Part shown: positions 852 to 41,295 of the stretch, piece after piece
How positions within the stretch are numbered: position 1 is the stretch's first letter
Layout: each line of letters begins with the position of its first letter
From: Podarcis bocagei
Lineage: Eukaryota
DNA length: 64,000 nucleotides
Assembly: GCA_964188305.1 (NCBI GenBank)
Contig: OZ076888.1
Direction: 5' to 3' (one strand)
Made by a program: the position numbers and the translations under genes
Notes under the pieces: generated by a model
The model's input: the letters and a program-made list of their open reading frames with translations, nothing else
What the model was told of the DNA's origin: nothing
The model's database searches: none

Positions 852-1331
852 GCAAACAAGGCCCCTGTTCCAGTCTTATAATTATCTTCTTCAGGTGACT
901 AGATGGTGACTAGAACCATATTCAGTAGGGCAGACCCAGCAGTGCCAGAGGTCCATATCACAGCACAGTTACGTATGGGAGTTTGCTGTTGATCCCTTTG
1001 CGGTTGAGCTATACAGAAAACTGTACTGAGACATTTCCTTTTAAGGAGCAGCATTGCTGTTTTTTTGGTTTCTCCCTCGTTTCCCATGCCAAGTTTGCCT
1101 GAAGCCACTACTTTCATTCACACAAAACAAAAGACCATCTGAATGACATATTCATTAGTATGTGAATCATTTCACTTTCCCCACAAAGTAAACAAAGTCA
1201 TGTGCAGACTTTTCTCCTATATGATGAAGGAAATATCTGATTCCCACAAACATTGTGGGAATAGCAGGCCTCCACAAACTGTGATCTGCAAAGACAAGTA
1301 TAGTCCACCTGGTATGTCCAGCAGCCCCTGC

Positions 1332-1335
1332 TGTG

Positions 1336-1370
<35 letters not shown>

Positions 1371-1373
1371 GTG
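1332..1373. repeat. (TG)n microsatellite
   Basis: Directly visible, one interruption. Confidence 0.95.
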
Positions 1374-3437
1374 TCACACACAGTTACCACAGTTCACATA
1401 TGTAGTCAATAGACACTATATTTTAGATCCATACTTAAAGTATCTTAGCTGTAAACCAAAATATATGTAAAGTGGCCTACAGATTCAACACAAAAAGTCC
1501 CAAAGCAGTTGGTATATTTGCCTGCACATGAAACTGACAAGATAGTCAATAAACTGTCTTGAGGTTGATGAGTTTCAACACCATGGAGAACATCTGCTCT
1601 AGACAGGGCAAGATTTTAAATTTGTCTCTCAATCTGACACTGCGTATGCTCACATTAAGGGATTCTACACTTGGTTGTAATCTGCAAATGCCTAGTGTTG
1701 TATCAGGAGCCATTTGTAGCAACAACCTCAACCTCTGCAATGGCAATGGGGAGCTGCCATGCTGGCTGGCAGAGTGGGGTGGGCTTTAACTCCAGAGATA
1801 GCTGGCAGGGGGGGGGGGTAATAAAATTGCTGGAGATCTACATTCAAGCATTGGGTGAGAGGAGTGCAGAGGCTCCAGATTCAGTGAGAGAAGAAAAAGA
1901 AATAAAACCAAGGTAAAAAATAGAGAATCCTCTTGTAAAAGAAATCACAATAATAATAAAAAAGTGGTGCAGCAAAGTGCCCAAGTGTGAACTACACACA
2001 GCCAAGGACTCCATAGGTGGCCTTAATTGTGTGTGCAGGTCCTTCTCTCCAGTCACTTTTCTCCATTCCTGACTCAGGTCAGATGCAGGATGGTTGAGGG
2101 TTCAGGACCCTGTTTTTGAAGCAAGACACACATCCCATCCTGCTTTATTTGTAAATGGGGCAGATGCATGAATGATGACTCCATTCCATCTGGCATGTCC
2201 CTCTGCGGTATGTTGGTCTGCCCCTCTCAAACCCCCATCAGTAACATGGGGAAAACAATACTGGGCAGAGCCTGTGCACTAGCAAGATGCTGTACATACA
2301 GTGTGTTAAGTATAATTGCTTAATTGTACATTGACATGGAAAACAACTCTGCATGCATACTGCTAAATGCAGAGCATGGAAACTTCTACTGTAGTTAAAC
2401 AAAGGTGTTGCAGAAAGCCTAACAGATTGATAATTATCTTAGAATATATCTCTGCTACTCTGTCATGAAGTGTTTAACTTTAGATCACATGAGAAAGGTA
2501 TTCAGTTGCAAATATCCATTTTGTGGGACTTGGCATTTGTAAGAATTTAAATATAACAGGACTAAAGCTACTTGGTATTGCTAATCTGTACATGTTTACT
2601 CAGAAGTAACTTCCACTATACTCAATCAGACTTATTCTTAAGTAAGTGTCTAAAGCAGTGTTGCCTCCTGCCCCCCCCCCCCGGATATTCCAAGGGGGCC
2701 ACAGGTGAAAATCATGTAAATAGGTGGACACAGCACGAGTCTTGGGGGGCACAGAGGGAACTGAGAAGTGAAGGGAGGGAAATCCACCCCAGCATCTAAC
2801 CGAGTGGGGTCATCTGGTGCTGCTGACCTGCATCTAAATAACTGTCTACTTAGAAGAAAACAGCATATTTTCTCAAGAGGTAAACCTCACAAATCAAGGA
2901 GGTTGTTTGCTTTCACAAAAGGGACATAAGACTAAAATGTCCACGCCACCAATGTGTCCTGCATACACAGAAAGGCACAAAGAACAAAATATGCTGTTCT
3001 TCCATGCATTTCAGGGAAGTGTATATTCCACACACCCTCCCAAGAACTCTGTGGAACAAGTTAATCGGAGGTGTTTGTGACTGGCACAAGGCCATCCCGT
3101 GAATGTTGTGTCCAAACTGACATTTGAACCCAGATCCCTGGAGTTGATACCAAACACTCTAGGGGTCAGCAGCTGAATGTCTCTGGGCCAAGTCCCTCTC
3201 CCTCAGGGATGCCAACTGCCCAGCAGTTGCTGGTAAAGAGGAAAAAGTGACATCCATAGTCACAGAAAGTCCTGGGTGGGCCAAATGTGTTCATGTGTTA
3301 GCCTGGTCACTCCCCAAAGTGGGGCTTCAGGAAAACTAGATGTTGAGAAGGGATGTATCTTCTATACACCATGCTAGACCTCAGTGTAATGGCTGAATCC
3401 ATGTCCTGGGATTCTTCTGCTCTGTCTTGGTCTTATG

Positions 3438-3748
3438 CAGGGGTCAGCAAAGTTTTTGTGGCTTGGGCCGGTTCACGGCCCCGCAGATGCCGCGAGTGCG
3501 CGTGTGTGCTTGTGCAAATGCTATTTCCGGTGCAGAGGAGGTGTGCACAGCTTCTCATTGGATGCAGGAGCTTCCTGCATCCAATGGGAAGCCGGCCAGC
3601 GTCGTGGAAGGGGGTCCCCACTCTGCTCCGCGCCGGTTTAGTGCGGTGCATGGGACCCGACTGACCGTGTGGCAGAGGGGTCCACAGGCCGGTTAAATGA
3701 CCCCCATGGGCCGCTTGTGGCCCATGGGCCTTAGGTTGCCAACCCCTG
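3438..3748. mobile_element. hAT-type MITE
   Basis: TIRs caggggtcagcaa / ttgccaacccctg; degenerate 8-bp flanks gtcttatg / ctcttgag; internal 20-bp hairpin at 3550-3592. Confidence 0.7.
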
Positions 3749-4994
3749 CTCTTGAGCTCTTGAGCAAGACCCCATATCATTGTCAGGGGAGGGGGAGACA
3801 GACAAGGGTGAAGAATAGAGCTGTCTTCCAGACCAGTGCCGACTTTTTTCCAGTTGAAAGGAAAACATCAAGATGTTCGTTTCAATATAACATTAACTCC
3901 CTCCCACCCACCCCCCTTTGAGAGGGGTATTCCAGGCTCATTGGCAAGTGACTAGAAGGAAGAATTTATAGTGTTGGCCTAGGAGATTTGTTGCTTGTTG
4001 TTTTTGTTTATCCACCTGTTTTCTGACTCCTTGAATAACTTTTCTCTCTGTCTCTCTCTCCCCGAAAAAGACAGGCGTGCAGTTACTGAAACAAGTCGGC
4101 ACTGTCGAGCATCTGAGACCCCCTCTTTGTTTGACTGCTTGTGCGTTAGGTGGGTTTAGTGGCCAGATGCACTGAAGTTTGCAACAGACAGTCCTTAGAC
4201 CATCTGCGCATTGTTTGGGTGGGTGGGGGGAGTGGACGAGTGGGGGGCGTGAAAGAAAGGCTGTTTGTGCAAGTCGTGGGAAATCTAGTGGCTGGCCTTG
4301 CCAGCATGCTCTATGAATTGAACTAATTGAAGATTAGGCTCGAGAGCTGGCCATAGCTGAGGGAGAGGATAATCCTTCATCAGTCCCAGTCGAAGGCCAG
4401 TAATTGGAGCTTATTGCAGGGCGGAGTTCCCCTCCAGTGCTGAAGAAACTGAGAAGCTTTTGCTGTTTAACTATGAATTCTCAACAGAAATTGAGGTTAT
4501 GGGCTCTGTGCATGTGGAAGAATTTAAAGCAAGGGCGGAGGGGGGGGACCTGCAAGAGGGGAGAAGTGGGTGGGAAGCGTAATGCAATTTTGATAGTCTA
4601 GGCTCAACTTTCAGAAAACAAAAGAAATGAAGGCTTCTTTTGTTGCCCAAACCAACATTTTAGCATACATAATGAGCCCTTGGGTTGTATGTAATTAACC
4701 CTTAAACCTGTCTCCAGGAATTTGTGTGTTTTAAAAAAGCTGCCTTATCTTAAAATAGGAGGCATTACCCCACAATCAACACAGGTAGGGAGACTTTAAA
4801 GGGATGCTAATCTGCTGTTGCTACATTTTCTCTGCCTTTAATTTATACTGCATGTGATGTTCTTATTACTGGTATTCACACAAGTGGTTGTTTCAGTTCA
4901 GGACAGAACAAGATCCTTTGCTGGGACTCCATTTATATTGAGCCAGTACTTCTATCACAGAATCAAGCTGTGGCATCAATTTAGTTGCTATTAC

Positions 4995-5142
4995 CAGTGC
5001 TTTTTTTCTGGGGGGACGCAGGGGGGATGCATACCCCTATACATTTTATGAATCCAAGTTTGGCCTCATTGAGGGACATTATTTCAATATGAGTAGGAAA
5101 ATGAGGGTACGCCTAAACTTTTTTAAAAGAAAAAACACACTG
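4995..5142. mobile_element. hAT-type MITE, 148 bp
   Basis: TIRs cagtgctttttttct / agaaaaaacacactg; perfect 8-bp TSD gctattac at 4987-4994 and 5143-5150. Confidence 0.9.
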
Positions 5143-5179
5143 GCTATTACAGATGTGCTTTTAAAAAAAAGCTTTATAA

Positions 5180-5310
5180 GGGGGACGGTGACTCTGTAAC
5201 TCTCCAGATGTTGTTCAGTATCAATTCCCAACAGCACAGCCATCATAACCAATGGTCAGGGATGACAGGAGGTGAAGTTCAGCAACAAGTGGAAGCTTAC
5301 AGGTTCTCTA
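5180..5310. mobile_element. Degenerate palindromic MITE (ctccagatgttg...tcagcaacaagtggaag family)
   Basis: Imperfect foldback, similar to the element at 16885-17030. Confidence 0.4.
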
Positions 5311-8344: not shown

Positions 8345-8717
8345 ACTATTTATATCACACACATCTTACTGGGTTGCCCCAGCCACTCTGGGTAGCTTCC
8401 AACATACAAAAAAAAAACATAATAAAACATTAGACATCTTAAAAAACCTTCCCTATACAGTGGTACCTCGAGTTACAAACGCCTCAGGTTACAAATGCTT
8501 CACGTTACAAACTCCGCTAACCTGGAAGAGTTACCTTGAGTTGAGAACTTTGCCCCAGGATGAGAACGGAAATTGTGTGCCAGTAGCGCAGCGGCAGAAA
8601 GAGGCCCCATTAGCGAAAGGATGCCTCTAGTTAAGAACAGTTTCAGGTTAAGAACGGACTTCTGGAACTAATTAAGTTCATAACTAGAGGTACGACTGTA
8701 CAGGATTGCCTTCAGAC
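8345..8717 (-). mobile_element. L2 3'-tail fragment split by a Tigger-type MITE
   Basis: ctgggttgccccagccactctgggtagcttcc...ccctata|MITE|caggattgccttcaga matches the reverse complement of the L2 tail at 41070-41190 and the copy at 52890-53000. Confidence 0.75.
8458..8698. mobile_element. Tigger/pogo-type (Tc1-mariner) MITE
   Basis: TA|cagtggtacctcgagtta ... taactagaggtacgactg|TA; same subfamily as 35113-35338. Confidence 0.9.
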
Positions 8718-8724
8718 ACCTGGC

Positions 8725-8788
8725 GGGTTGGGATGCTGGACACGATGGGCCGTTGGACTGATCCAGCAAGCTATTCTTACCTTCTTAG
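8725..8788 (+). mobile_element. CR1-type 3' tail fragment (CR1 or CR1-tailed squamate SINE)
   Basis: gctggacacgatgggccgttggactgatccagcaagctattcttaccttctta; similar tail at 10810-10880. Confidence 0.45.
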
Positions 8789-10051
8789 TTTCTTACTCCC
8801 CTCAGAGCTACAATTCCCAGCAGCCCTTGAAAAACGACAGTGCCCAATAAGCCATGCGTTCCCCAGCAACTGGTGTCTCTGATCTTGCAGACTGCGTGTT
8901 GCCACCATGACAGGCAGCTGCTGACAGCACTCACAGGTGTAAACATGCAGACAGTCTCCTCTGCAGGCTCCTCACACATTAAGAGCAACATCACTATGAA
9001 AACATTAAATACTTAAAAATATCACTTCCTTACATGTAATAAATTAGCATATCAGAGATTTTTTTATGTGTGAGGCATTCAAAGATATATACCCACAGTC
9101 CCAAATTATACCACCTCATTCTGCAAGACCTGTACAATGGATTGACCTACTTATTATTTTAAAATGCTTTTATTTGCCCTTAAAAATAAAAAAAGAATCT
9201 AGTAAAAGTGCATTTAAATAGAACTATTAAAGTTTTCAAGGTTCTTCACATTCATTATTATCATCATTACTTTTCTGTAATCCTTACAAGGTAGTTTTGT
9301 TGGCTCTGTATTATTAAATGAGTGGTTGAGGTTGAGAGACAATGGCTTCACTAAATCTAGAGAGTTTTCGGGTGAAGTAAGATATGATTGTTATGCTCCT
9401 CTCCTGATATTTTACAGCAAAACAGTTTGCCAGCCCTGATAAACAAAAATGCTCAGAACGTGCAGTTTCACGGGATCACTAAAATGTGACAAATAAAATT
9501 GTGTCTGCTACATACAATGGTTAATTTATTCACTTCCTTGTTAAAAAAGGAAAGGAAAGGAAAGCAGCTTTGGGAGAAGCAGTAAGAAGCAGAGAGGAAG
9601 TGGTATTTAACTCTTGGAATGGGAAAGTCTGCAGTTCCTCCACGGTTTCCCCACCTCACCCATTTTCAAACGTGAGGAAAGCAGAGGGAGGGAGGTATTT
9701 TGGAGCAGAGAAGAGGCAGTGGGGAATGGTTTTGCTACAACTTTCCTCCTCGCTGTTTCACACGGTCCCCACAGTAAGCTTTTTTTGTGTGGGAAAAGAC
9801 AGAGAAAAAGTGCCACTGATTGCGAGTTTCACACATTACATGCATACATGTAAAGCCTGGTTTAGCTTAGAAGCAGGGTTTGAGTTTACAAAATCGTAAA
9901 CTGCATGGAAAGAAAGCATCAAACACCACTTGTCACCTTCTCACATAACAGCAGGGCCAAATTCACCCACTTGCCAAGTTGATTGGCAGTTAGAAGGAAG
10001 TGCTTCTCTACACAAACAGGAGATGATGACTGCCATCTTTGTGTCCTGCGA

Positions 10052-10465
10052 GTAGAGATGGGGAAGAAATTTGATTCTGCTTGTATTTTAATAAGAAACT
10101 ACCTCATTCACACTTCTTGAATCAAAACGTGAACTGAAACCCAGCTGTCCTTCAATATTTGCACTTCTCCAAACTTTGCAGTGCTATTCTCCAACCACTC
10201 TTTACAAAAATGTGTATGTTGGGGAAAAGGGTGAATATGAAGGCATATATTTATGAAAAAGCATACAAAAATGCTGTATATTGTGGGGTTATTTTGGCAG
10301 TAATGTGTACATTAGTCAAAACTGCATACAAAAATGTGTTCATTAGGAGAAATTAACACAAAAATGGTGATGAATTCTCTTGGGGATTTTTGCAGATTGT
10401 TGGGAAAATGTGGAGAAATAAACTCACATTTGCAAAAAAAAGAGAAAATACCAAGAGAACCTGAA
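10052..10465. mobile_element. Unclassified non-autonomous interspersed repeat with internal gcatacaaaaatg repeats
   Basis: Repeated tacaaaaatg(t/c) units; related sequence in opposite orientation at 63375-63545. Confidence 0.5.
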
Positions 10466-12054
10466 GCTGGCACATTTGTACAACGCTACATGGTCGGGGC
10501 CCCTGGGAAGCTGACCTGACTAGCTGTGGCTGGAAACAGAATCCTGGACCACAACAATATTCCCCCACCTGTTGCCCTCCAGATACTCTGGAGTACAGCT
10601 CTCATCAGCATCAATCAGCATGCCTGTGCTGGATGGCCTGACGGGAATTACAGACAGTGGCCATTTTATGTGTGTCTCGTTGACTTACGACCACACGCAT
10701 GCTCATTGCCACGGACCTGGAAGTGGCCAGAAAAGGGGGCATAACGAGGTAGGGTGGGGGTGGGAGGGGCTTATGCATGCAGGGGAGCATGGGGGGGGCA
10801 GGAATGCAACACCTGGCTAGGGATGACTAGACTAGATGGATCTTGGTAGAATCTACAAAGCTCTTCTTCTGTTCTTAAAGCATTCACAGTCCCTGCATTT
10901 TATTTTGCATTATTGCCAGGTCCCTAAATGCCAGTATAAACAGTTACCCTGTATAGAGAAATAAACCAGTATATTTCACTCTGGTTAAGCTGAAAAAGTT
11001 AGATAGCTAAACACTGTTTATTTAATCTCCACACTGTGCTGAGTTAGAAATATGGGGATAATTATTGCATTCAAAAGTTAGCGCTCTCTGCTTCAAAAGA
11101 AAAAAATGAAAGAACATATGGATTTCTTTAAAACATCTCTTTGAAATGGTTTAACTTCACTGGGCTAATTTACAAGCAGTTTTAACATATGAAGAGTTCA
11201 TTTCAGGACATAAGTTTTCCTGTGTGTGTGTGTGTTTTAAAATGTCTTCCTGTGTAAATCATTGGGGGGGGGGGAGAATTAGGCTCTAGACTCTGATGCT
11301 GTTGTATTTTGGCATTCTGCCTCTTGACTGTTTTATTGTCTACTTTGGCTGGACTCAAAGTTCCAGTTAGAGTTGCCTGCCAAAAAGAAAGGGGGAAAAT
11401 GTTAGGTCCTTTAAGGATACTGAAAAATAAAGCCAGTTTTTAAATCTGCCACGTCCTGTAGGCAAATAAAAACCAAATCTCTATGGAGCTCAGGCGTTCT
11501 TTCCTGTTCTCCTTTTTGGATTCCAAGTAGGAATGAAACCGTTTTCCTTTGCATCAAGGAAAAGGGTTCAAGGGCCTCACAGCTCTCTTACCAGGCATGC
11601 CGCCCCCTCCCTTCCCCTCGTTCAGTCAAGTCAAGGTCCAGATTTACAGCCTCCAGTGGGAAAATTATTCCTCAGTTCAGGTTTTTGCACATTTTAAACA
11701 AGACAAACAATGTAAAATCTATATATCACTCTTGCACATCTGAGCTGTTCAGTGTGGTTTTGCTCTCAGGCTGCTGCCATGTAGGACGTTAAACCTATAA
11801 ATGCTTCAGGGTTTTTAAGAATTATGAGTACAATCCTGCCAACAGTTAAGCACTTTGAAAGCCCACTGATTTCAGCTGAAATTTCTCCTCACTGAAATCA
11901 CTGGGGCTTAAAAACTGTCACCTTTGCTTCTTTGTTATGTTTGTTTGATTATGACCTTTCTTTTATTACACTTTTGTAAGGAAGGAGGTGAAATGAACAA
12001 AGTCCCAAAACATAGGGTCAGGGGTACTCAAGGGTACGCAGTACCAGCACCTCA

Positions 12055-14890
12055 TTTGTTCAATATATATGATTTCCTTGGTTTACAAAAGTACATGCCT
12101 TGTCTCTTTTTTCAGGTTGTAGTCCTTCTTACAAATCAGTTACATTTGCTGTGAGACATTAGTGTTGAGTACAGTACAGTGGTGCCCCGCAAGACGAAAT
12201 TAATTCGTTCCGCAAGTTTTGTCGTCTAGCGAATTTTTCGTCTTGCGAATCACGAAATCCCATAGGAATGCATTGAAAATCAATTAATGCGTTCCTATGG
12301 TCAAAAAAAGTCCAAACAAAGCCAAATTTGGTACAACAACAGTTTATTAACTGCTCTTTAAAGTCACACATACTGTAAAGAGCAGTTCAAAAATTGAAGG
12401 GAAAATAAATTAACTTTATAAACAAAACATGTCTTTGTTTTTAGACAAAGGAAACAAAGTCGTGAGACGTTTTCGTCTTGCGAAGCAAGCCCATAGGGAA
12501 ATTCGTCTTGCGAGGCAAATCGAAAACGGAAAAACCTTTCGTCTAGCGAGTTTTTTGTCTTGCGAGGCATTCGTCTTGCGAGGTACCACTGTATAAGGTT
12601 GGGGAAGTCGAGTGGGGAGGGGGAGGCTTATATTCTTTTGTATGGTGTCCGTGTGGGGTTTTGTGTCAGCGTCAACTGGGTAAGTTCTCTTTCTATTTGT
12701 TTATTACATTTCCTTGGTAGTGAGAGGTATTGGGGGCCAGGGTGTGGGTGCTTGTCTGTGGTTGTCTGCAGTGGGGTTTGCATTTACGAGCGGGGGTGGG
12801 GGTGGTCCTTGTTAGGTCAGGTAAGCCAGATTGATTCGTATGCTGTTGATGGATTTTTGTCATTGTCCTGTTGGGCTGTGTATGTGATAAAGGGAAGCCA
12901 TACCCTTCTTCTATTTGTTCCCATGTCAGTTTCAGTTTATTGGTTAGTTTTTTCTAATAAGGCTGTTTCCCACACAATTTGATACCATTGGTTCATGTTT
13001 ACTCCTGACAGGTCTCTCCAGTGTCTGACTATGAGGTTTCTGGCTGCTGAGAGTAGGTGGGTTATAAACTCTCTATACTGTGAGCGGTGATTATGATCTT
13101 GGAAGATGTTCAGTAGGGTCACTTCTGGGTGAGTTCTAATACCTGTTTAGTTATTTTGCATATCTCTTGTAGTACTGCTGTCCAGAAGAGTTGGATTTTA
13201 GGGCATTCCTACCACATGTGGAGGGATGTGCCTGTGGAGGTGCAGCCTCTCCTTGGTGAGGTTCCTGGGCATATCAGTGCCAGTGTCTATGGTGTTAAGT
13301 ACCACCTGTAGGTGAGCTTCAGAGTCAGTTCCCTTCTTTTGGCTGATATGGACTTAAAGGGAGGTTTAGACCACATTCTAGTCCATTTGGTGGGGTTAAT
13401 TTCATAGCCAATGTCATGCTCCCATTGTTCTTCGATTGCGTCAAGGGGGGTTGTGGGATTGTGGAGCAGTATTTTGTACATTGTGGATGCCATCCCTTTG
13501 CTGTGTCCCTCTGCTGTCAGGAGAAGGTTTTTGAAGGTGGTCCAGGGCCTAGTGGCTGCTGATTTTACCGCTGGATTGTTTAAGAAAGCGTATAGTTGAC
13601 AGTGTGTTAGCCAAGGTATTTGGGTGTCCCCTAGTTTGTCTTGTATTTCTTGTGCTGGTATGGGTTTGTTGTTTTTGTAGAAGTCTTTTAGGCAGTGCAG
13701 GCCTTCGGTTTGCCAGGTGTTTTTCTGGAGGTTTTGTGCTGGGGGTCAGGCCAGGGGGTTAGTGGGGATGGGGAGAGTTTGCCTGCTTTTCACTTCTTGT
13801 TCAGTGAACCTGTTCAGTATTGTGGGGATTTTCTTTAGTTTATTTGGAGAAATGGGTGTGCTGTTGTGGAGAGGTTTTCAACGGTGTCTCTCTCCAAGAC
13901 CCATTGTTTCGTCTCGTTTTCTAGAATATACGGGATTATGTGGTATACTTGGTTGGCGATGTAACATAATTCTATGTTGGGGATTCCCTGTCCTCCTTCT
14001 GAGGAGGGGAGGTGCAGGTATTTAGGGCTTATTCTTATTATTTAGGGCTCTTTGTGTGATAAAATAAACGAGTGTAGCCACTTCTGGAGTTGGCTGGGGG
14101 AATCCAGATTGGGAGGATTTGGAATCAATAGGTTAGCTTTGAGAGAGTGATCATTTTGATCATGGCTATTTTGTCTGAGAAGATGAAGTTGGCACTGTTC
14201 CATTTCCTCAAGTAACTGTTGATTTGTTGCCACAGGGGCTTGTAATTGTGGAGGTATAATTTGAGGTTTCTGGTTATTTGAACCCCTAGGTACCTGAATT
14301 TGGTGCGGCAAAGTTTTATCTTTGTGATGTTGGTGAATTCCTTTTGGGTATGCGGGTGTGTGTGTGTGTGTTAAAGCACATAGCCTCAGTTTTTGCAAAG
14401 TTTACTTGCAGGCCCGACACCATTGCGGATGTGTTGAGTTGCTGTGTTTATGGGGTCTGGTGTCATGACCATCAGGTTGACCTGCAACCCTAGTTTATAG
14501 GTTTTACCTTTTATTTCCACACCCTTGATATCTGGGGCTGCTCAGAGTTAGATTGCAAGGGGTTCCAGGGCCAGGATGAATAGGAAGGGAGACAGTGGGC
14601 ATCCTTGTCTTGTGCCTCTTGGGATTGCTATGGTATTGGAGTCCATATTGCTAATTCTGCATTTTGCTGAGGCTTGGGAGTAAATTTGTAGGAAGTTGGG
14701 CCCAAATTTCATGTTAGTTAATACTGCTAATAGATATTTCAATTCTAAGCAATCAAAGGCTTTAAAGATGTCTAGGGACCTGATCGCCAGTGGGAGTTTG
14801 GTTGTTTTGCTGTGTTCTATCAGATTCAGTAGTTTCCTCCTGGGGTCTGTTACGTTGCAACCAGGAACAAAGCCTGGTCAGCCCTGCTAG
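12055..14890 (-). mobile_element. Old, internally deleted L1-clade LINE (ORF2 RT to C-terminus plus 3' UTR)
   Basis: Minus-strand peptides RGTRQGCPLSPFLFILALEPLAI (RT), ELTLKLTYRWYLTP, HLLSAARNLIVRHW; many frameshifts; divergent from the 36-42 kb L1. Confidence 0.85.
12177..12591. mobile_element. Tigger/pogo-type MITE inserted in the L1 3' UTR
   Basis: TA|cagtggtgccccgcaagacgaa ... ttcgtcttgcgaggtaccactg|TA; about 8 copies of a ttcgtct(t/a)gcga motif. Confidence 0.9.
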
Positions 14891-15189
14891 GAATCTTCTG
14901 ATTTCCTGTTCAGGTTTAGTATCATTTTAAAAAAAAAAATTGCCCGCTTTTAATTTTTATTTTCTCATTAAAAAATTGCCTTCTCACTATTACTATCATT
15001 CATCTTATTTCTATCTTTTATTTTTTAGATTCCAACAGCTAGGTAAACTGGTGCTCAGCTGAGGGAGAGTCCTTTTTGCCCCCCCCCCTTCAACTCCGGA
15101 GGCCTTCAGGCCTTGGAGCTTCACTGGGCCGTCGGGGGGGGGTGTGCTCCCGGTCCCAGCAAAGTTGAGGCCAGTGGGAGGGGGGTAGA

Positions 15190-15294
15190 AGTCCGGCACC
15201 TCTATTTTGTTCTTGTTAAAAAGTGTGGCACGTAGCGTAACAACTTCATGGCAAGTACCAGCACCTATTTTTCTTTTTTAAGAAAGAAGCACTG
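15190..15294. mobile_element. Right end of a hAT-type element; matching left-side fragment at 12019-12055
   Basis: Ends agaaagaagcactg like the TIR of the 4995 MITE; gtaccagcacct motif shared with 12041-12052. Confidence 0.55.
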
Positions 15295-15639
15295 GTGAGT
15301 GGAGACACTGCTCTCCTGCCCTGTAGTTTCCCAAGATGGATATTCTGCTATTGCATCCCAAGGCAGGGGACTTTGGGATTTTACCTTCCAGGTTTTCAGT
15401 GCAGCAGCCAGAAACCACAGCACCCTCCACCTTGCTGGTTCAAGAGGTCAATTGACCTATTGACCATCCCAATGAAGCTGCAACACTTTTGCAACAGCAC
15501 AAAAAGAAAAGAAAAAAATGCATCCATTTCACTGTGGAGAACTGGTCCTGCGACAAAGTTAGCATATATTGTGCCCATACAAGGTGACCAACAGAGATAG
15601 AACTTCATTGGATGTATGTCTCTCATACATCTTTCTCAT

Positions 15640-15810
15640 TTAGTTATCACATTTATATCCTGTATTTTCCCCAAGGTGGTCAAAGCAGCCTATGTGAGGT
15701 GGGGGAGTGGCTGGATGCTATCCTTACAATAGCCCTGAGTGGTCCAGGGGAACTTTGTGGCTGAGTGCACATGAGGTCTCCCTGATCTGCCACACCACAT
15801 TGGCTCTCAT
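15640..15810 (-). mobile_element. Old tRNA-derived squamate SINE fragment (MIR/Squam3-like)
   Basis: atttatatcctgtattttccccaagg...tgagtggtccaggggaactttgtggctgag; resembles 32470-32635. Confidence 0.45.
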
Positions 15811-16884
15811 ATATTAAAATGACAAATACTGAATAATATTCAGCTAGAACTGAAACAAATATCGTTGCCACAAAATTATCTTCAACATTCTCCTCTTTGA
15901 AAATCATGGATAGTAAATCCAATAGGTATAAAAAATATTCGTATACACCTTAGAATATATATATTATTGTATATGTTATAAATACTAACATAGTCCTAGG
16001 CTACCAGTCTTGAACTGGCAGGATTTTGGGGAGGAACAGGATTTTGCTGAGAGGTGCAGCTGGGACTGGGTCACCCGGGAGCAGGCTAGGGATGGGGAAG
16101 GAGAGGTTGTTGTAGACAATACTCACAGGGTGACAGAGGATGATGAGAGTGCAGGGGGCAGTGCACAGGAAGCCAAGCAGCGGGACCCAGAGCCAGAGAG
16201 GCCCCCGTCCCCATGAACATGACAGGTCCTAAGACATAGGGAACAGCGGGCAGAGCACTCCAGGATGCAGAGTCAGGCCAGGGCCTGCAGCCCAGTTCAC
16301 TAGCTGGCCAGGTGGGGAAGGAGGCATAGACTCCTCAGCTGGGGCAAGCTGGAGCAGGCGAGGGTCACATGCTCATCAAGCCCAGGTGCTGCAGTTAGCA
16401 GACACAGTATCAGAAGGCAGCAGAGCTGAGGGGCTGTGTTTGTTAAACCTTGAGGGATCTTGTCTGGGATTCTCCTTAGACCTTCACAGGTTTCTACTTT
16501 GAGATTGCCTGCTGAGCTACTTACTGCTTACTTGGACTGACTCTGGACTGCATCTCCTGACTTGGCTTGTGTGGATTGGCATCTGGGACTTGGAACTTCA
16601 TCTTGGCACACTGTCTGCCAGGTAGGCCAGGGGATAATAATAACCCCCCTTTGAGCTTCAATGGTTCTCATTAAACCCATAGAAGGTGCTATGAGAGGGA
16701 ACTGATAAGGGGTGATGGATTTCCTGGTCGTCTTGTGCATTTGTAAATAAATCATGGGTGACAAAAATGTCAAATGACTTTGGGAAATGTCTTCTCAAAG
16801 TCAAACTCTGGCAAGTGCAGCCTGCAGAACTTCTCAAGGCTTGGGGAAGTGGGGAGCATGTAGCAATATATTTACTTTCACATG

Positions 16885-17030
16885 TTAGGCCATTGTTCCC
16901 CAATCTGGTGCCCTCCAGATGTTTTGGGCTAAAGTGCCAACTGTTCTATCCTAACCATTGACTATGCTGGCCAGAACTGATGGAAATGGTAGTTCAAAAC
17001 TTCTGAAGGGTGGCCGCTTGGAGAAGGCTG
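16885..17030. mobile_element. Palindromic hAT-like MITE
   Basis: ccctccagatgttttgggcta ... tagttcaaaacttctgaaggg imperfect inverted repeat. Confidence 0.5.
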
Positions 17031-18063
17031 CTTTAGGCACAGAAGGAGAACATTCTGTTAGACACAACAGTGGTCCAAGGGACAGCTCAGCATCCTGGCT
17101 ACTGCCCTCCCCTCCAAGTTGTAGGTCAACCTGTGTGGAGTGAGATATTGGGCAGGGGTTGCAATCTGGAATTAAGAGGGTCAGGATTTCTGCTGGCAGA
17201 AATTTCTTCCACTTTTATCATGCCATGTAAGTTCTGTATAGTTCTTGAGACTTTGATCTGTTAACATGCTGAGGCTTCCCTGAAGAATGATTCACCTCTT
17301 AGCCTTGTGGTTCTCCTTCTGTGATTTCAGCCAACAATTGGAAAGAAGTCTTCAGTGCCTTCTTAAACTTCCTGCGACATTCCCCTTTGCTCTTCCGGGT
17401 TAATCCGGTGATTAGGAGGGGATTTAGGCCTACTTTGGGCTAGGAGTCCTCCCGGCTTGGACTGCATGCCCTGACAGTGCTCCTGCCTTTAGGAGGCTAC
17501 TGCTCCGTCTTCTGTTTCTTCCCTCAGAGTCTAACGTATATATCAAATTTGCAGTCAAACCAAATCATGTTTTGGCAGATAGGCACATGAAGGGGCTGAG
17601 GCCCGTAGGGATCACTTCCCTATTGTGGCCTGAGGGCGTAGCTATATATCTGCTCCTCCCTGCCTGGGCACACCCCCACCCCCGCTCTTCTCCATCATAC
17701 CTACGGCTACAACATTAGAACAACTGCAAATAGGAGCTCAAGCTCAGACTCCATTTTTAAGCCAGACCTTAGTACTGTATGTCTTAGAAACTCAATTAGC
17801 ATTTTAAGCCTGCCTGCACAAATCTGCTGAATCTGCTATTCTTTAAGATGTATACTGAGTGAGTAAATTTTTTTCTACCTTTTACAAGACTTGTTTCTGT
17901 GTGGTTATTATTTTAAGGGAGAAAAAAGGAGATAATACCAGGAAGATCCAGTTCACCTCAAAGCATTCTGGATTATTAATACCGAAAGGCTAAAACTAGC
18001 CTGTCTAATCCATCTGACTGGGTTGCCCCAGCCACTTTGATGAAGAAAGGATAATAAGGCAGG

Positions 18064-18431
18064 ATGGATTCATTGAAGTATCAGGAAATCCTAGGAGGAA
18101 ACATCATGCTGTCTGTGAGGAAGCTGAAGCTTGGGTATCATTGGACCTTCCAACAGGACAATGATCCCAAGCACCACTCAAATTCCACCAAGGCTTGGTT
18201 ACAGAAGAAGTCTTGGAAGGTTCTACAGTGGCCATCACAGTCATCTGAACTGAACCCCAATGTCTGGTGAGATTTGAAGAAGGCAAATGCAAGAATATTA
18301 TTGAACTGGAGGCCATTGCTCATGAGGAATGGGCTAAGATTGCTCAGGAACGCTGCCGCAAGCTGCTGTCTAGCTATGCATCTGGTTTGCAGCAGGTCAT
18401 AGCAGCAAAAGGCTGCTCTACTAAGTACTAA
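18064..18431 (+). pseudogene. Tc1 DD34E-type transposase C-terminal remnant
   Basis: [19 protein letters not shown] and terminal KGCSTKY* motifs; deletions and frameshifts after the LNP motif. Confidence 0.9.
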
Positions 18432-18540
18432 AGATGCTTGCCATGAAGGGGTTGAATAATAGTGAGACTGGAGAAGCCAGTGTAAGTTGCAATTTCAGCT
18501 GAATTTGAACCTGAAGCATCCATTGTGTTGAGCTATTTCA

Positions 18541-19777
18541 TTTTTTAAAATAATAATTTTTATTAAGTTTTCCATTTTAACAATCCAATCAAATCACATT
18601 AAATATTCCAAATTATACAAATATATATATCATGAAGTCCAAATATTTTGCCAAATTATAAATTTTTTGTTGGGGGTTCCCATGCTTCAAGTTCAGTGGG
18701 GTCCAATCATCTCATATTTCTACTGCTTTGAGTGTCCACTAGTCCCATCTTTAAATCTTCTTGTTATTATCCTTCTTCTTTCATAGCCTCTGAGTTGTTT
18801 CCACAGGTGAGCTGAAATGAACAATATTATGCTTCTGTGTGAACTTTGTATGACTCTCCCCCCCTTTTTTGCAGCTGATAAGTCTTTTATTTGCAATATG
18901 TCCTCACACGCTGGTATTTATGCCGAATCCATCCAAAAGTCCTTCTCGGGTGGCAGACGCCATCTTTCCTCAGTTCCGATGAAATAGAATCTAGGTGTTT
19001 GCTCATTAATTTTCTCAGACAGGTTGCACCAAACATTAGTCTTTCCAGAGGAGGATTGCCAAATCGAACTTGAGATACCGATATAATAACAAAGTAAGGG
19101 CTCGCCTCCCCCATGACTATTAATCTCTGCAACACAGTCTGTCTCATAATGGCAGATCCCGATTACAAGAGAGTCTTTTATCTTCTTCCAAATATTTCGA
19201 AAAACAAAGGCTTTAGATAATATTATTATTTCCACACAGTTTATATTTTCCAATCTCACTTGCTATAGGTAATATAGACGGTTCTTCTGGGGCGGGGGGG
19301 TTGTTAGGTAGTATCGTAGTAGAAAAAGAAAAAGTTTTATCCCCCCTCCTTTCCATTCCATTTCAACATACTGGCTTAGATGTTATTCTTTGATGTTATC
19401 TTTCCTCCAATCCGTCACTCTTAGCATCTCAGTGGCTGGCTTAATTAGCAGATAAAATACCCTTTATTTGCTCGAAGCATGTCCATAAATCTAATATCCA
19501 ATCTTTTATCTTAAGAAATGGAACTTGGAGCGCTCACAGAGACAGCGTCCAGGAGATCCAAGCTCCCTCGAGGGCTTTCCATCCAGTGCCCCCACCCCCT
19601 CCTTCTTTTCGACTCGGGGGTGGTTTGTGGGCAGCCGCGAATGAGACTGCATCTTCCCTTCTACCGGGAAGAAACCTGGGAGGCTGATTACTCCCATCTC
19701 AGCCTCTTAATTACCTCATGTGAGCTGGAGAGATGGTATTGTCGGCCATCTTCCGTGGTGCCCCTAGCGGAGCCCCC
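18541..19777 (-). mobile_element. Non-autonomous L1-type retroposon, 1237 bp
   Basis: Perfect 16-bp TSD gtgttgagctatttca (18525-18540 and 19778-19793); minus-strand 5' end GGGGGCTCCGCTAGGGGCACCACGGAAGATGGCCGAC; 3' end AAAACTTAATAAAAATTATTATTTTAAAAAA; no ORF1/ORF2 motifs. Confidence 0.8.
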
Positions 19778-20203
19778 GTGTTGAGCTATTTCAATCGCTT
19801 TTGTTTGATTGCTCATTGCAGACAGCTGAAATTTTGATAATAAACACAATTTACAGTGGGGGTTGAATCATTTTGATTGCAACTGTATATACTGTCCTAG
19901 TATCCATGAGCATGATGACCAGCCTAAAAATATTTTTAAAATAAAATAAGGAAAAATATGTGAAGAATTGGCTATTATTTATTAAATGTCTTTACCACCC
20001 TTCATCCGAGGATCACAGGGCAGGTTACAATATATATATACTTCCTTTTGTAATTTCTGAAGCTATGGCCAATAAACTTAATTGGGTACACTTGGATTCT
20101 AGTATTCTAGGGAGGAATAAACATTTATTTTTATCAGAAGTTTTCATACTAATTGTAATTGTATATAATATGTTCCAGCATGTTCTTCCTTGGAGTGCCC
20201 TCT

Positions 20204-21046
20204 CATACCCTCCAACATTTTTCAGATGAAAATAAGGGCATTCTATTCTACACCAGAAAGATTTTCTTGCTGCACACATAGACGTCATATACACATATGC
20301 ACCTGTCACCTTGAGCCAGTTGCAACCTCTCCACCGAACCTTACCTCACAGGATTGTTGTAAAGAGAAAATGTGTGAGGGAAGGGATTGTGTACAACACC
20401 TTCCACAGATAAATGGAATGAAATAAATTTTCAGAGGTAAGCTGGCTTGAGTCCCTGTCAGGGAAAAAGCGAGGTAACAATAATAACAACAATAAAAAAT
20501 AGAAATTGTCAGAATGATCAGAAACACACCAGAGAGTAAATCCTACTGCACTCAGTGGGATTTACTTCTGAGTAAAAATGCTTAGGATTGCAGTATAAGG
20601 CTGCCCAGTCTTTACCCAGTTACCTGGGAGTAAGTTCCACTGAATACCGTAGGGCTTCTGAGCAGAGATGTAAAGGCTTGCTGTATGAGGCTCCATTTGC
20701 AATACGCTTCGCATATTTCTTAAGAAATGGCTGGCTGCTGAAGCATTGCAATTGAAGAGTTTAAAGTGAATTGATGACATTTTCCTTCAGAAGTATAGGG
20801 AGGGCTTCATATGCCAGCTTCACCATTTCCTTCATTTGAGGCAAGGATTTTATTTTCGGTTTAAACAGGACTCTGTTTTTGTACCTACACACACACACAC
20901 ACACACACACACCACTTTCAATTGTTTGCTGTGATGGGGAGGGGAGGAAAAAGGAAAACTGGGACATTATGGGATCAATCAGAAACTGGGGTGGCTTCAG
21001 CAATTCTGAGACTGTCCTTGGAAAATTGGGACATTTGGAAGATCTG
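20204..21046. mobile_element. Composite TIR element with heterogeneous interior
   Basis: Termini cataccctccaacatt ... gggacatttggaagatctg; flanks tgccctct / tgcactct; same left terminus at 8285. Confidence 0.5.
20886..20911. repeat. (CA)n microsatellite
   Basis: Directly visible. Confidence 0.95.
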
Positions 21047-35338: not shown

Positions 35339-37605
35339 TAATGATCTCAAATTGTACTGCCCACAGAAAGTTTGTCTGCTAACGAACCAATGGACCTTTT
35401 ACAGAACTACTGTGTGTGGTAGAGGATTCTGAATTCTTTTTCAGAGCACCCACAGACAGTTTAGGAGGTATAGTCTCCAGGTTTCTTGGGCCTCATCAAA
35501 ATCATGTGTGACCTAGAGCATACAAAATATTATTCTGCAGCAACCCTTTGCATTTGGGGCCTATGTGTCTCTGAGGGGGCAAGCCTGTGTGTTGTTTTTT
35601 ACTGACACACTCATTTTCTATTTGGAAGGATTTACTTGTATGTAGGAACATTCAATTGTGTGCCATCGCCTTTCACTCTGAAATGCTACAGCTGAGACAT
35701 TGTTTTACTACCTTGGTGAGAACCAGGACATCATCTCTGACCATAAAGAGCATTTGTGTTCACCAAACTGTCTTTCAGAGAAATTTAGCTGCCATTGCTT
35801 TTCTTTTCTTTTCTTTTCTTTTTTATAAATATTTTATTCAGTTTTCAGATACAAAGATTATAAACATAGACTAAGAGAAGAAATAAAAAGAACAAGAAAA
35901 AGAAGAAAGAAATAAAAAAGAAAAACCAGCCGTTCAACATTTTTTTTTAATAACTAACTGGACTTCCTCACATCTCCCTTACCCTGCATTCTTTATAATA
36001 AAGTTTTCAGCAAATTATTACCTTGTTTCATACCTTATTTTGTACTTTTCAAGTACTATACCTCAAGTTTTTCATACTTTTCATCAATTACTTATCTCCT
36101 AAATTAAACATAATATTACCTTAAAATTTAACCTTTTCATACTTAAAATATAATTTCTTAATTCACAACTTAAGTTGCTGAAGCTATAGTTTCCGAATCG
36201 TGAAAATTTTTAACATTCATATAACTTATATTGTTTTTGTAAATAGTCCTTAAATTTTTTCCAGTCCTCTTCCACTGTTTCTTCTCCCAAATCTCGGATT
36301 CTGCCAGTCATTTCAGCCAGTTCCATGTAGTCCATCAATTGCGTCTGCCACTCTTCCAGTGTGGGCAAATCTTGTGTTTTCCAATATTTTGCGATGAGTA
36401 TTCTTGCTGCTGTGGTCGCATACATAAAAAAGTTCTGTCCTTCTTTAACACTTTCTGGCCGACAATGCCCAAGAGGAAGGCCTCTGGTTTCTTGGTAAAG
36501 GTATACTTAAATACCTTTTTTAACTCATTATAGATCATTTCCCAGAAGGCCTTCACTTTTGGACAGGTCCACCAGAGGTGAAAGAATGTCCCTTCAGCCT
36601 CCTTACATTTCCAACATTTATTATCAGACAGGTGATATATTTTTGCAAGCTTGACTGGGGTCATGTACCACCTATATATCATTTTCATAATATTTTCCTT
36701 CAGGGCATTGCATGCCGTGAATTTCATTCCTGTGGTCCATAACCTTTCCCAGTCTTCAAACTCAATATCCTGAGCCCATTTTATCATGGCTGATTTGACT
36801 GTCTCATCCTGCGTGTTCCATTTAAGCAGCAAGTTATACATTCTCGAAAGAACCTTAGTCTTTGGTTCAAGCAGTTCTGTCTCTAATTTCGATTTTTCCA
36901 CCTGGAATCCTATTTTTTTATCCAACTTAAAAACCTATTGGATTTGAGCATAGTGTAACCAATCTCACACCTTGTTTTTTAATTTTTCTAAACTCTGCAG
37001 CCTCCAATTGTCTCCAGTTTTTTCTATTATTTCCCAATATTTCGGCCAACCGGCCTCCATATTGAGTTTTTTTCGAGCCTTGGCCTCCATTGGTGATAAC
37101 CATCTCGGGGTCTTATTCTCTAGTAAGTCTTTGTATTTTGACCAGACAATAAATATTGCTTTTCTGACAATATGGTTTTTAAACATTTTGTGAACCTTTA
37201 CCTTGTCATACCACAAGTATGCATGCCAACCAAAAGCATTATTAAACCCTTCCAGATCCAGGACATCAGTGTTCTCCAAAAGCAACCAATCCTTCATCCA
37301 GCAGAAAGCTGCAGCTTCATAATATAACCTTAAGTCCGGCAGGGCAAATACCCCTCTTTCTTTTGCATCAGTTAGTATTTTAAATTTTATCCTGGGCTTT
37401 TTGCCCTGCCAGACAAACTTAGAAATATCTTTCTGCCACTTTCCAAAACATTCCACTCTGTCCACAATCTGTAGGGTTTGAAACAGAAACAACATCCTTG
37501 GCAGTACATTCATTTTTACAGCTGCAATTCGACCCAACAAGGAAAGTTTCAATCTTGACCAAGTTTCTAAATCCTTTTTGATTTCTGACCAACATTTTTC
37601 ATAAT

Positions 37606-37968
37606 TAGAATCATAGAATCATAGAATCATAGAATCATAGAGTTGGAAGAGACCACAAGGGCCATCGAGTCCAACCCCCTGCCAAGCAGGAAACACCATC
37701 AGAGCACTCCTGACATATGGTTGTCAAGCCTCTGCTTAAAGACCTCCAAAGAAGGAGATTCCACCACACTCCTTGGCAGCAAATTCCACTGTCAAACAGC
37801 TCTTACTGTCAGGAAGTTCTTCCTAATGTTTAGGTGGAATCTTCTTTCTTGTAGTTTGGATCCATTGCTCCGTGTCCGCTTCTCTGGAGCAGCAGAAAAC
37901 AACCTTTCTCCCTCCTCTATGTGACATCCTTTTATATATTTGAACATGGCTATCATATCACCCCTTAA
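37606..37968 (-). mobile_element. 5'-truncated CR1 LINE inserted in L1 ORF2
   Basis: (tagaatca)n, i.e. a TGATTCTA tail on the minus strand; minus-strand peptide LRGDMIAMFKYIKG...TRSNGSKL...NIRKNFLTVRAV*QWNLLP...FKQRLD. Confidence 0.92.
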
Positions 37969-40294: not shown

Positions 40295-41191
40295 AGAATA
40301 ATCAGAACCAGTGAAGGCGGCGAAGGTCCTGTGTGAGTGTCTGGAGGCGGTTGGAGGATGGATGGCGGCTAACAGATTGAGGTTGAATCCTGACAAGACA
40401 GAAGTACTGTTTTTGGGGGACAGGAGGCGGGCAGGTGCGGAGGATTCCCTGGTCCTGAATGGGGTAACTGTGCCCCTGAAGGACCAGGTGCGCAGCCTGG
40501 GAGTCATTTTGGACTCACAGCTGTCCATGGAGGCACAGGTCAAATCTGTGTCCAGGGCAGCTGTTTACCAGCTCCATCTGGTACGTAGGCTGAGACCCTA
40601 TCTGCCTGCGGACTGTCTCGCCAGAGTGGTGCATGCTCTGGTTATCTCCCGCTTGGACTACTGCAATGCACTCTACGTGGGGCTACCTTTGAAGGTGACG
40701 CGGAAACTACAACTAATCCAGAATGCGGCAGCTAGACTGGTGACTGGGAGCGGCCGCTGAGACCATATAACACCGGTCTTGAAAGACCTGCATTGGCTCC
40801 CAGTACGTTTCCGAGCACAATTCAAAGTGTTGGTGCTGACCTTTAAAGCCCTAAACGGCCTCGGTCCAGTATACCTGAAGGAGCGTCTCCACCCCCATCA
40901 TTCTGCCCGGACGCTGAGGTCCAGCGCCGAGGGCCTTCTGGCGGTTCCCTCATTGCGAGAAGTAAAGCTACAGGGAACCAGGCAGAGGGCCTTCTCGGTA
41001 GTGGCGCCCGCCCTGTGGAACGCCCTTCCAGCAGATGTCAAAGCGATAAACAACTACCTGACATTCAGGAGACATCTTAAGGCAGCCCTGTTCAGGGAAG
41101 TTTTTAACGTGTGATATTTTATTGTATTTTTATGGAAGCCGCCCAGAGTGGCTGGGGAGGCCCAGCCAGATGGGCGGGGTATAAATAATAA

Positions 41192-41248
<57 letters not shown>
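40295..41248 (+). mobile_element. Young 5'-truncated L2 LINE inserted in the L1 endonuclease
   Basis: RT C-terminus (RLNPDKTEVL, SRLDYCNALY, LHWLPV, RAFSVVAPALWNALP) open except one TGA at 40758-40760; 3' stem-loop; (ATT)n tail; 10-bp TSD attaatgttc (40285-40294, 41249-41258). Confidence 0.95.
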
Positions 41249-41256
<8 letters not shown>

Positions 41257-41295
41257 TCCAGCTGAGAAGCTGCAGGGACATCCTGAATCAATCTG

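What the first reader, a model, noticed from the sequence alone, without database searches (positions are those of the whole stretch)
18541..19777. Complete 1.24-kb non-coding retroposon with an L1-style YY1 promoter: candidate L1 parasite family
Seen in sequence: a perfect 16-bp TSD. The minus-strand 5' end starts with a G-run followed by AAGATGGCCG about 25 nt in. An 8-bp hairpin (GAGGCTGA/TCAGCCTC, 19680-19707) lies in the CpG-rich leader. The 3' end (GAAAACTTAATAAAAATTATT-A6) resembles the 3' end of the resident L1 (GAAAACTGAATAAAATATTTAT-A). No tRNA A/B boxes and no ORF1, EN or RT motifs are apparent; the longest frame (113 aa) lacks an ATG start. Established: AAGATGGCCG near the 5' end is the YY1 site that positions the L1 internal pol II start, and long TSDs with A-tails are marks of L1 target-primed reverse transcription. 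Inference: this is a full-length, pol II-driven, non-autonomous element mobilised in trans by L1. It is neither a SINE nor an ordinary 5'-truncated L1, and its interior is of unknown origin.
Basis: partly seen in the sequence, partly recalled or inferred. Interest (0 to 1): 0.75.

Follow-up and report, generated by a model that had tools for sequence, protein, structure and literature searches.

The report
Non-coding L1-dependent lizard retroposon copy
This 1.24-kb stretch is a young, complete copy of a moderately abundant, protein-less jumping element of wall lizards that starts like a LINE-1, ends in a poly(A) signal and short A-tail, and almost certainly borrows LINE-1's copying machinery; it is a real family but of a known general kind.

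Summary
A 1,237-bp insert on the minus strand (18541-19777) lies between a perfect 16-bp target-site duplication. It ends in AATAAA plus a short A-tail. It starts with GGGGGCTCCGC, with AAGATGGCCG at nt 26-35, and has no protein, tRNA or Rfam signal.

New here: it is not single copy. In whole-genome contigs of two lizard samples the interior has about 30-160 times single-copy depth. The first ~85 nt reach about 650-700 times and the last ~150 nt about 500-1,300 times. Diverged contigs from other copies tile the element colinearly from 18646 to 19780. Depth drops at both TSD-defined ends. This rules out a one-off retrocopy and a local deletion within an L1. Stranded RNA reads from relatives are 5-7:1 on one strand, most likely sense, though a few loci dominate.

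The 5' start resembles the published conserved 5' termini of lizard and mammalian L1. The resident L1 in the window is not the parent.

The scan has noted this element type before on other DNA of this genome: at least five 1.1-1.2-kb copies, plus larger RT-less L1-like elements. Verdict: a real family and a new variant of a known kind, of moderate interest.

The parts
19778..19793 (.). Target-site duplication, copy next to the element's 5' end (GTGTTGAGCTATTTCA on +)
   Evidence: 16/16 identical to 18525-18540; paralogous empty sites carry it once
18525..18540 (.). Target-site duplication, copy next to the A-tail
18541..19777 (-). Complete 1,237-bp non-coding retroposon copy
   Evidence: Bounded by the TSD. 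Summed contig depth falls about 10-fold or more at both boundaries. Diverged contigs of other copies tile 18646-19780 colinearly (table 8).
19678..19777 (-). 5' head, first 100 nt: G-run, GGGGGCTCCGC start and YY1-like core. This is the most abundant and best conserved 5' module.
   Evidence: Depth is 21,811 (X1) and 10,976 (X3) in bin 19691-19765, against ~3,000 and ~1,700-2,600 in the next two bins. Loose ends pile up at 19678. The motifs resemble published L1 5' termini (PMC5381506).
19743..19752 (-). AAGATGGCCG, YY1-type core at element nt 26-35
   Evidence: Only exact match in the window. The mammalian L1 consensus contains CAAGATGGC (PMC5381506). Function not tested.
19680..19706 (-). 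Hairpin 1, 8-bp stem GAGGCUGA/UCAGCCUC
   Evidence: Present in the MFE and centroid fold of the 240-nt leader, z -2.78
19649..19675 (-). Hairpin 2, stem UCUUCCC/GGGAAGA. Relatives' consensus sequences fold at the same place with different stems.
   Evidence: loose-end consensus sequences at 19678 (agreement only 0.74-0.75)
19538..19777 (-). GC-rich leader (58% GC, 10 CpG)
18716..19540 (-). Family-specific A-rich interior. It is non-coding, with no repeats and no homology found.
   Evidence: Depth is 1,000-5,300 in X1 against a single-copy depth of ~33. No hits. No tandem or internal repeats.
18541..18715 (-). AT-rich 3' module with AATAAA (18559-18564) 12 nt upstream of the A6 tail (18541-18546); the signal ends 18 nt from the element's 3' end
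   Evidence: depth 16,700-39,100 in X1. Part of this may reflect low complexity or 5'-truncated copies.

Best explanation
This is a young, full-length copy of a non-coding, non-autonomous retroposon family of wall lizards that is copied by L1 target-primed reverse transcription. The proposed mechanism has three steps. (1) A source copy is transcribed by RNA polymerase II from an internal promoter in its first ~100 nt. This head has the look of an L1 5' terminus: a G-run, a GGGNGCTSCGC-type start and a YY1-type AAGATGGCC core at +26. (2) The ~1.2-kb RNA is cleaved and polyadenylated at its own AATAAA. (3) L1 ORF2 protein, made by autonomous L1s of the genome, captures the poly(A) end in trans, nicks an A/T-rich target and reverse-transcribes the RNA. 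This leaves a 16-bp target-site duplication. Shown here: the insertion marks, the absence of coding capacity, family status with shared boundaries, and strand-biased transcription of relatives. Inferred: promoter function of the head, Pol II, and L1 as the driver. The element is most likely the smallest, protein-less end of a series of internally deleted L1 derivatives in this genome, rather than a foreign sequence that acquired L1 ends. That last step is the weakest (about 50%).
For: A perfect 16-bp TSD, an A-tail and AATAAA 12 nt upstream of the A-tail (ending 18 nt from the 3' end) are present. Paralogous empty sites of the flanking repeat carry the TSD sequence once. Family status comes from Logan contigs of two DNA samples (X1, which carries this very insertion with 0 mismatches over 19729-20022, and X3). 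Summed depth is ~30-160 times single copy over the interior, ~650-700 times over the first ~85 nt and ~500-1,300 times over the last 150 nt. Most pieces are 85-95% alike, and depth drops sharply at 18541 and 19777. Diverged contigs chain colinearly: 18646-18807, 18775-19027, 18951-19111, 19033-19393, 19364-19661, 19572-19780 (table 8). So the internal arrangement is that of the family, not a local deletion. For RNA, raw stranded reads of X23 lie about 5:1 (7:1 outside the AT-rich tail) with the first mate on +, which is the usual signature of minus-strand (sense) RNA. The element is non-coding. It is not Pol III: there are five internal T4-5 runs in the sense strand from nt 321 on, no tRNA and no Rfam family. 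The head resembles published conserved L1 5' termini. Anolis clade 2 is GGGNGCTGCGCATGC with the first 100 bp conserved across families, Anolis clade 1 is ...N8ATGGCG, and mammals have G2-6...CAAGATGGCGGA (PMC5381506). Unverified leads from other notes of this scan include at least five further 1.1-1.2-kb copies with the same kind of head, and larger RT-less L1-like elements.
Against: No other copy could be fetched as sequence, so uniform 5' ends and distinct TSDs of siblings were not seen directly. Summed contig depth is only a rough proxy for copy number. The AT-rich tail may attract spurious matches at 85% likeness. The RNA reads carry a minority set of variants (for example 18766 A>G in 24/24 reads but ~14% of DNA depth). 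Expression in that library therefore comes from one or a few loci, which may be read-through within host genes rather than self-driven. No start-site pile-up was found. The nick site (bottom strand ATTTCA/ATC) is only a loose match to the L1 endonuclease preference TTTT/AA. The resident L1 shares nothing beyond ~32 nt at the 3' end, and no L1 with this head was recovered.
Confidence: 0.8

Rival explanations
1. Retrocopies (processed pseudogenes) of one host long non-coding RNA or mRNA gene. A single, highly expressed source gene repeatedly feeds L1, and the copies themselves are dead on arrival.
For: The insertion marks are the same. The RNA reads come from one or a few variant loci. The origin of the interior is unknown.
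Against: There are tens to more than a hundred copy equivalents spread over 85-99% identity. The head and tail modules are far more abundant than the interior. The head carries L1-terminus-like motifs at the exact 5' end. There is no ORF, although the copy is young. Other notes describe size variants with the same head.
Confidence: 0.1
2. A single L1 copy that suffered a deletion after insertion, leaving its 5' UTR joined to its 3' UTR at this locus only.
For: The head and tail are L1-like, and the 5' and 3' modules are much more abundant than the interior.
Against: Diverged contigs from other copies, in two DNA samples and one RNA sample, bridge every part of 18646-19780 colinearly (table 8). 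No junction is therefore private to this locus. The interior itself is repeated ~30-160 times. There is no similarity to the resident L1.
Confidence: 0.03
3. A SINE-type element transcribed by RNA polymerase III, or an SVA-like composite.
For: It is non-autonomous, has a short A-tail and depends on a LINE.
Against: It is 1.24 kb long. Five T4-5 runs lie in the sense strand from nt 321. There is no tRNA/7SL/5S head. There is no VNTR or internal repeat. It has its own AATAAA.
Confidence: 0.02

Closest known systems
HAL1 (half-L1) elements of mammals, and the HAL1-like / single-ORF RT-less L1 derivatives noted elsewhere in this lizard genome
   Same: They have L1-like ends, no ORF2, depend on autonomous L1 and amplify as their own family.
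   Different: HAL1 keeps an ORF1, whereas this element has no ORF at all and no recognisable ORF1 remnant. Sequence kinship to the lizard single-ORF elements could not be tested.
SVA / LAVA (hominoid Pol II-transcribed, non-coding, L1-mobilised retroposons; trans-mobilisation shown in PMC3287187)
   Same: They are kilobase-sized and non-coding, are polyadenylated at their own AATAAA, and are mobilised in trans by L1 with TSDs.
   Different: SVA is a composite (hexamer, Alu-like, VNTR, SINE-R) without an L1-like 5' terminus. This element has no repeats and starts like an L1.
RIME/ingi and NARTc/L1Tc of trypanosomes (own knowledge): short non-coding deletion derivatives that keep the two ends of their autonomous LINE
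   Same: The architecture is 'LINE 5' end + LINE 3' end, no genes', propagated by the parent LINE.
   Different: The host kingdom and LINE clade differ. Here only ~100 nt of the head and ~30-150 nt of the tail look shared, and the ~800-nt interior is not yet traced to any L1.
L1 5' termini described for Anolis and mammals (Boissinot & Sookdeo 2016, PMC5381506)
   Same: It starts with a G-run. GGGGGCTCCGC matches GGGNGCTGCGC at 10 of 11 positions. An ATGGC(C/G) YY1-type core lies within the first 35 nt. A ~100-nt conserved head is followed by divergence.
   Different: It is a mix of the clade-2 start and a YY1 core, which was reported for clade 1 and mammals. The core sits at +26 rather than +13. 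The match is between motifs, not an alignment to a Podarcis L1.

Membership tests
L1-mediated (TPRT) retroposition product | Target-site duplication of ~7-20 bp flanking the insert | tested here: met
   16/16 bp; empty paralogous sites carry it once
L1-mediated (TPRT) retroposition product | 3' poly(A) tail preceded by a polyadenylation signal | tested here: met
   AATAAA at 18559-18564, with an A6 tail at 18541-18546. The tail is short.
L1-mediated (TPRT) retroposition product | Insertion at a TTTT/AA-like endonuclease site | tested here: inconclusive
   The bottom strand reads ATTTCA/ATC at the nick. It is A/T-rich but a loose match.
Repeat family (as opposed to a one-off retrocopy) | Many diverged copies sharing interior and boundaries | tested here: met
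   Depth is 30-160 times single copy over the interior, pieces are 85-95% alike, tiling is colinear, and depth steps at both ends. Individual copies with their own TSDs were not seen.
Autonomous L1 | ORF1 and ORF2 (endonuclease, reverse transcriptase) | tested here: not met
   The longest ORFs are 113 and 86 aa, with no Pfam hit, no tblastn hit to L1 proteins and no relatives
HAL1-like element | Intact or recognisable ORF1 | tested here: not met
SINE (Pol III) | tRNA/7SL/5S-derived head with A/B boxes, and no internal Pol III terminators | tested here: not met
   No tRNA and no Rfam family. Five T4-5 runs lie in the sense strand. Length is 1.24 kb.
SVA-like composite | VNTR and SINE-derived modules | tested here: not met
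   No tandem or internal repeats
L1-type internal promoter head | Conserved 5' terminus motif of lizard or mammalian L1, including a YY1 core near the start | tested here: inconclusive
   The motifs match the published consensus sequences, and the head is the most abundant and conserved module. No Podarcis L1 with this head was recovered, and no transcription start was mapped.
Processed pseudogene of a host gene | Colinear with a spliced host transcript from an intron-bearing parent locus | not testable with these tools
Named Dfam/Repbase family | Match to a curated consensus | not testable with these tools
   No repeat library was on hand. Literature searches found no description.

The most novel reading that the evidence does not exclude
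Wall lizards harbour a self-sustaining, protein-less 'stowaway' of L1. It keeps only an L1-type promoter head, with a structured leader of two hairpins (one possibly covarying between subfamilies), plus a polyadenylation tail around an unrelated or fully decayed interior. It would be the end point of a living size series of RT-less L1 derivatives (2.4 to 1.1 kb), and it spreads YY1/CTCF-like sites through the genome. That would be a vertebrate counterpart of RIME/NARTc and a natural system for asking which RNA features L1 needs in trans.
Probability: 0.3. Interest if true: 0.6.

Novelty: new variant of a known kind. Interest (0 to 1): 0.4.

Why it matters
Non-mammalian L1s are many, young and diverse, but their non-coding parasites are barely described. 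The textbook L1 dependants (Alu, SVA, HAL1) are mammalian. This family keeps just an L1-like 5' head and a poly(A) end. It would show that L1 trans-mobilisation of Pol II transcripts has produced stable parasite families outside mammals. It would also pinpoint the ~100-nt head as the conserved, probably promoter-bearing, unit of lizard L1-type elements. For annotation, it explains a recurrent 1.1-1.2-kb 'orphan' repeat in this genome.

Tried and rejected
- A search for other copies or fragments in the 64-kb window found none (blastn word 9 and 7, nhmmer).
- The resident L1 (35.8-42.8 kb, minus strand) was tested as parent and rejected. Only the last 32 nt are alike, which is marginal, and no protein remnant was found.
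- The word search with the 113-aa frame gave no relatives.
- The attempt to reach full-length lizard L1s through the resident ORF1 gave 6 hits, among them two Podarcis muralis proteins.
- An exact-match scan of metagenome contigs with a 23-nt head motif gave 0 hits.
- Rfam, ARAGORN, Pfam, internal repeats and tandem repeats all gave nothing.
- The idea that the depth break at nt 100 marks a hard module boundary was softened. The relatives' sequence just beyond it is a homologous hairpin with a different stem. Part of the 'break' is therefore local divergence.
- Read depth at the flank cannot be used as start-site evidence, because reads from other copies cannot lie on this locus's flank.
- No consensus of the family was built.

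Full report
**What is in the sequence**

Read on the minus strand, window 18541-19777 is a 1,237-bp insert.
- It begins GGGGGCTCCGCTAGGGGCACCACGGAAGATGGCCGAC.
- It ends ...GGAAAACTTAATAAAAATTATTATTTTAAAAAA.
- It is flanked by GTGTTGAGCTATTTCA (+ strand) at 18525-18540 and 19778-19793, 16 of 16 identical.
- AAGATGGCCG sits at element nt 26-35 (19743-19752). It is the only exact match in the 64-kb window, so its weight comes from its position, not from enrichment.
- The 8-bp hairpin lies at 19680-19706 and is part of the minimum-energy fold of the 240-nt leader (z -2.78, 1 of 200 shuffles as good).
- AATAAA lies 12 nt upstream of the A-tail, ending 18 nt from the element's 3' end.

- The leader is GC-rich (58%) but has only 10 CpG, with o/e 0.49. 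That is the same as the rest of the element; the window average is 0.28.
- The likeness to the 3' end of the resident L1 is confined to the last 32 nt and is marginal: 7 of 300 shuffles score as high.

**No coding or small-RNA identity**

- The longest frames are 113 aa (GTG start) and 86 aa (ATG start). All three sense frames are full of stops.
- Six ORFs have no Pfam match even at E 1.
- The 113-aa frame has no relatives in the word search.
- L1 ORF1/ORF2 proteins of the window and six lizard ORF1 relatives give nothing better than E 0.13 by tblastn.
- There is no Rfam family and no tRNA.
- There are no tandem or internal repeats of note.
- The sense strand has five internal T4-5 runs from nt 321 on. 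A Pol III transcript could not span the element.

**It is a family, not a one-off**

This is the main new result. I laid the contigs of two DNA samples and one probable RNA sample, plus raw RNA reads, on 18041-20277.
- Sample X1 carries this very insertion. A 294-nt contig with no mismatch spans the 5' junction (19729-20022). Single-copy depth there is about 33, and about 16 in X3.
- Over the interior (18716-19540) summed depth is 1,000-5,300 in X1 and 700-2,000 in X3, roughly 30-160 copy equivalents.
- Depth declines gently from the 3' to the 5' side, as expected if some copies are 5'-truncated.
- The first ~85 nt reach 21,800 (X1) and 11,000 (X3), about 650-700 times single copy.
- The last ~150 nt reach 17,000-39,000 in X1 and 8,500-20,300 in X3, about 500-1,300 times single copy.
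- Depth falls about ten-fold or more beyond both TSD-defined ends.
- Most pieces are 85-95% alike.
- Diverged contigs chain colinearly across almost the whole element: 18646-18807, 18775-19027, 18951-19111, 19033-19393, 19364-19661, 19572-19780.

The internal arrangement therefore belongs to the family. It is not a deletion private to this locus.

The tool warns that summed depth is not a copy number. The AT-rich tail may also collect loose matches at 85% likeness. I use these figures only as orders of magnitude.

**The target**

The element sits inside an older repeat of roughly 10-20 copies.
- Several single-copy-depth contigs join 18505/18507 directly to 19778.
- They carry ~25 letters in between that align to the pre-TSD flank.
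- These are paralogous 'empty sites' with the TSD sequence present once.

This confirms that the 16 bp were duplicated on insertion. The nick site (bottom strand ATTTCA/ATC) is A/T-rich but only a loose match to the L1 endonuclease preference.

**Transcription**

- Raw stranded RNA reads (X23) lie about 5:1 with the first mate on the + strand, and about 7:1 outside the AT-rich tail. In most stranded libraries this means RNA of the minus strand, that is, sense to the element.
- The reads are 85-95% alike, so they come from relatives.
- They share minority variants, for example 18766 A>G in 24 of 24 reads but ~14% of DNA depth. One or a few loci therefore dominate.
- No pile-up of read starts was reported.
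- Reads of other copies cannot lie on this locus's flank. The fall of RNA depth at 19777 therefore says nothing about a start site.

Sense-biased expression of family members is supported. Self-driven transcription is not shown.

**The head**

Boissinot and Sookdeo (PMC5381506) report the following L1 5' termini.
- Anolis L1 clade 2 starts with GGGNGCTGCGCATGC and keeps its first 100 bp conserved across families.
- Clade 1 starts GACTTCCGGTG-N8-ATGGCG.
- Almost all mammalian L1 start G2-6...CAAGATGGCGGA, with the YY1 site needed for accurate initiation.

The element starts GGGGGCTCCGC, which matches the clade-2 start at 10 of 11 positions. It also carries GAAGATGGCC at +25.

Its depth profile breaks about 100 nt in, and many DNA and RNA loose ends pile up at 19678. 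The relatives' sequence just beyond that point is not unrelated. The loose-end consensus sequences fold into a hairpin at the same place as this copy's second hairpin (19649-19675), but with different stems: UCUUCCC/GGGAAGA here, GUUCCCC/GGGGAAC and a C8/G8 stem in relatives. This hints at a conserved stem-loop. The consensus sequences agree only 0.74-0.75, so it is a lead and not a finding.

**Relation to L1**

- The resident L1 (about 35.8-42.8 kb, minus strand; RT domain in 38307-40067) shares neither head nor interior.
- I tried to reach other lizard L1s through its ORF1. This gave six hits, including two proteins named from Podarcis muralis.
- A 23-nt head motif has no exact match in metagenome contigs.

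The partner lineage and the origin of the ~800-nt interior remain open.

**What the scan noted before**

These notes are unverified leads and are not counted as support. On other DNA of the same genome, said there to be a wall lizard, earlier readers and agents listed:
- at least five complete 1.1-1.2-kb non-coding elements 'with a CTCF + YY1 head' (s1-359610, s1-354287, s1-354239, s1-354232, s1-362159);
- a 1.75-kb non-coding element;
- RT-less L1-like elements of 1.6-2.4 kb that keep a cut-down ORF1 or a 201-aa ORF.

The follow-up of s1-359610 could not decide whether its element belonged to a family. The read-depth result here answers that for this element type. The size series makes descent from L1 by internal deletion and decay a reasonable origin. 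I could not test kinship between these elements.

**Verdict**

The YY1-type promoter, Pol II drive and the L1 partner remain inferences.

The closest known analogues are HAL1 (which keeps ORF1), SVA (a composite without an L1-like head) and RIME/NARTc-type end-to-end LINE derivatives of trypanosomes. It is a new variant of a known kind and of moderate interest. It may well already exist as an unnamed consensus in automated repeat libraries, which I could not check. No consensus of the family was built.

Noticed in passing
Consensus sequences of relatives' sequence at the same place (DNA and RNA loose ends at 19678) fold there with different stem sequences, which may be covariation.
   Followed up: partly
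window 18041-18540 and 19778-19900: The element is inserted in an older repeat of roughly 10-20 copies. Paralogous copies without the insert are seen as contigs joining 18505/18507 to 19778.
   Followed up: partly
window 19916-20065 and 20141-20277: These are very high-copy repeats (summed contig depth 10^4-10^5 against ~33 for single copy). Many loose ends sit at 19973, 20034 and 20204. They were not identified, and there is no Rfam or tRNA hit.
   Followed up: no
window 42850-43045 (minus strand): A palindromic MITE-like element with terminal inverted repeats (CAGTGGTACCTCGGTTTA...TAAACCGAGGTACCACTG) lies directly upstream of the resident L1's ORF1 leader.
   Followed up: no
window 35800-42800 (minus strand): The resident L1 has a broken ORF2 (fragments of 586, 195 and 196 aa) and a 266-aa ORF1-like frame. 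Its closest database relatives are 343-359 aa and include Podarcis muralis proteins. Its 3' end carries a (GAAAA)n tail.
   Followed up: partly
window 19757-19770 (minus strand, element nt 8-21): CCGCTAGGGGCACC resembles a CTCF core motif (own knowledge) but has one G fewer than the canonical run. Other notes of the scan report a perfect CTCF motif at this spot in sibling copies.
   Followed up: no
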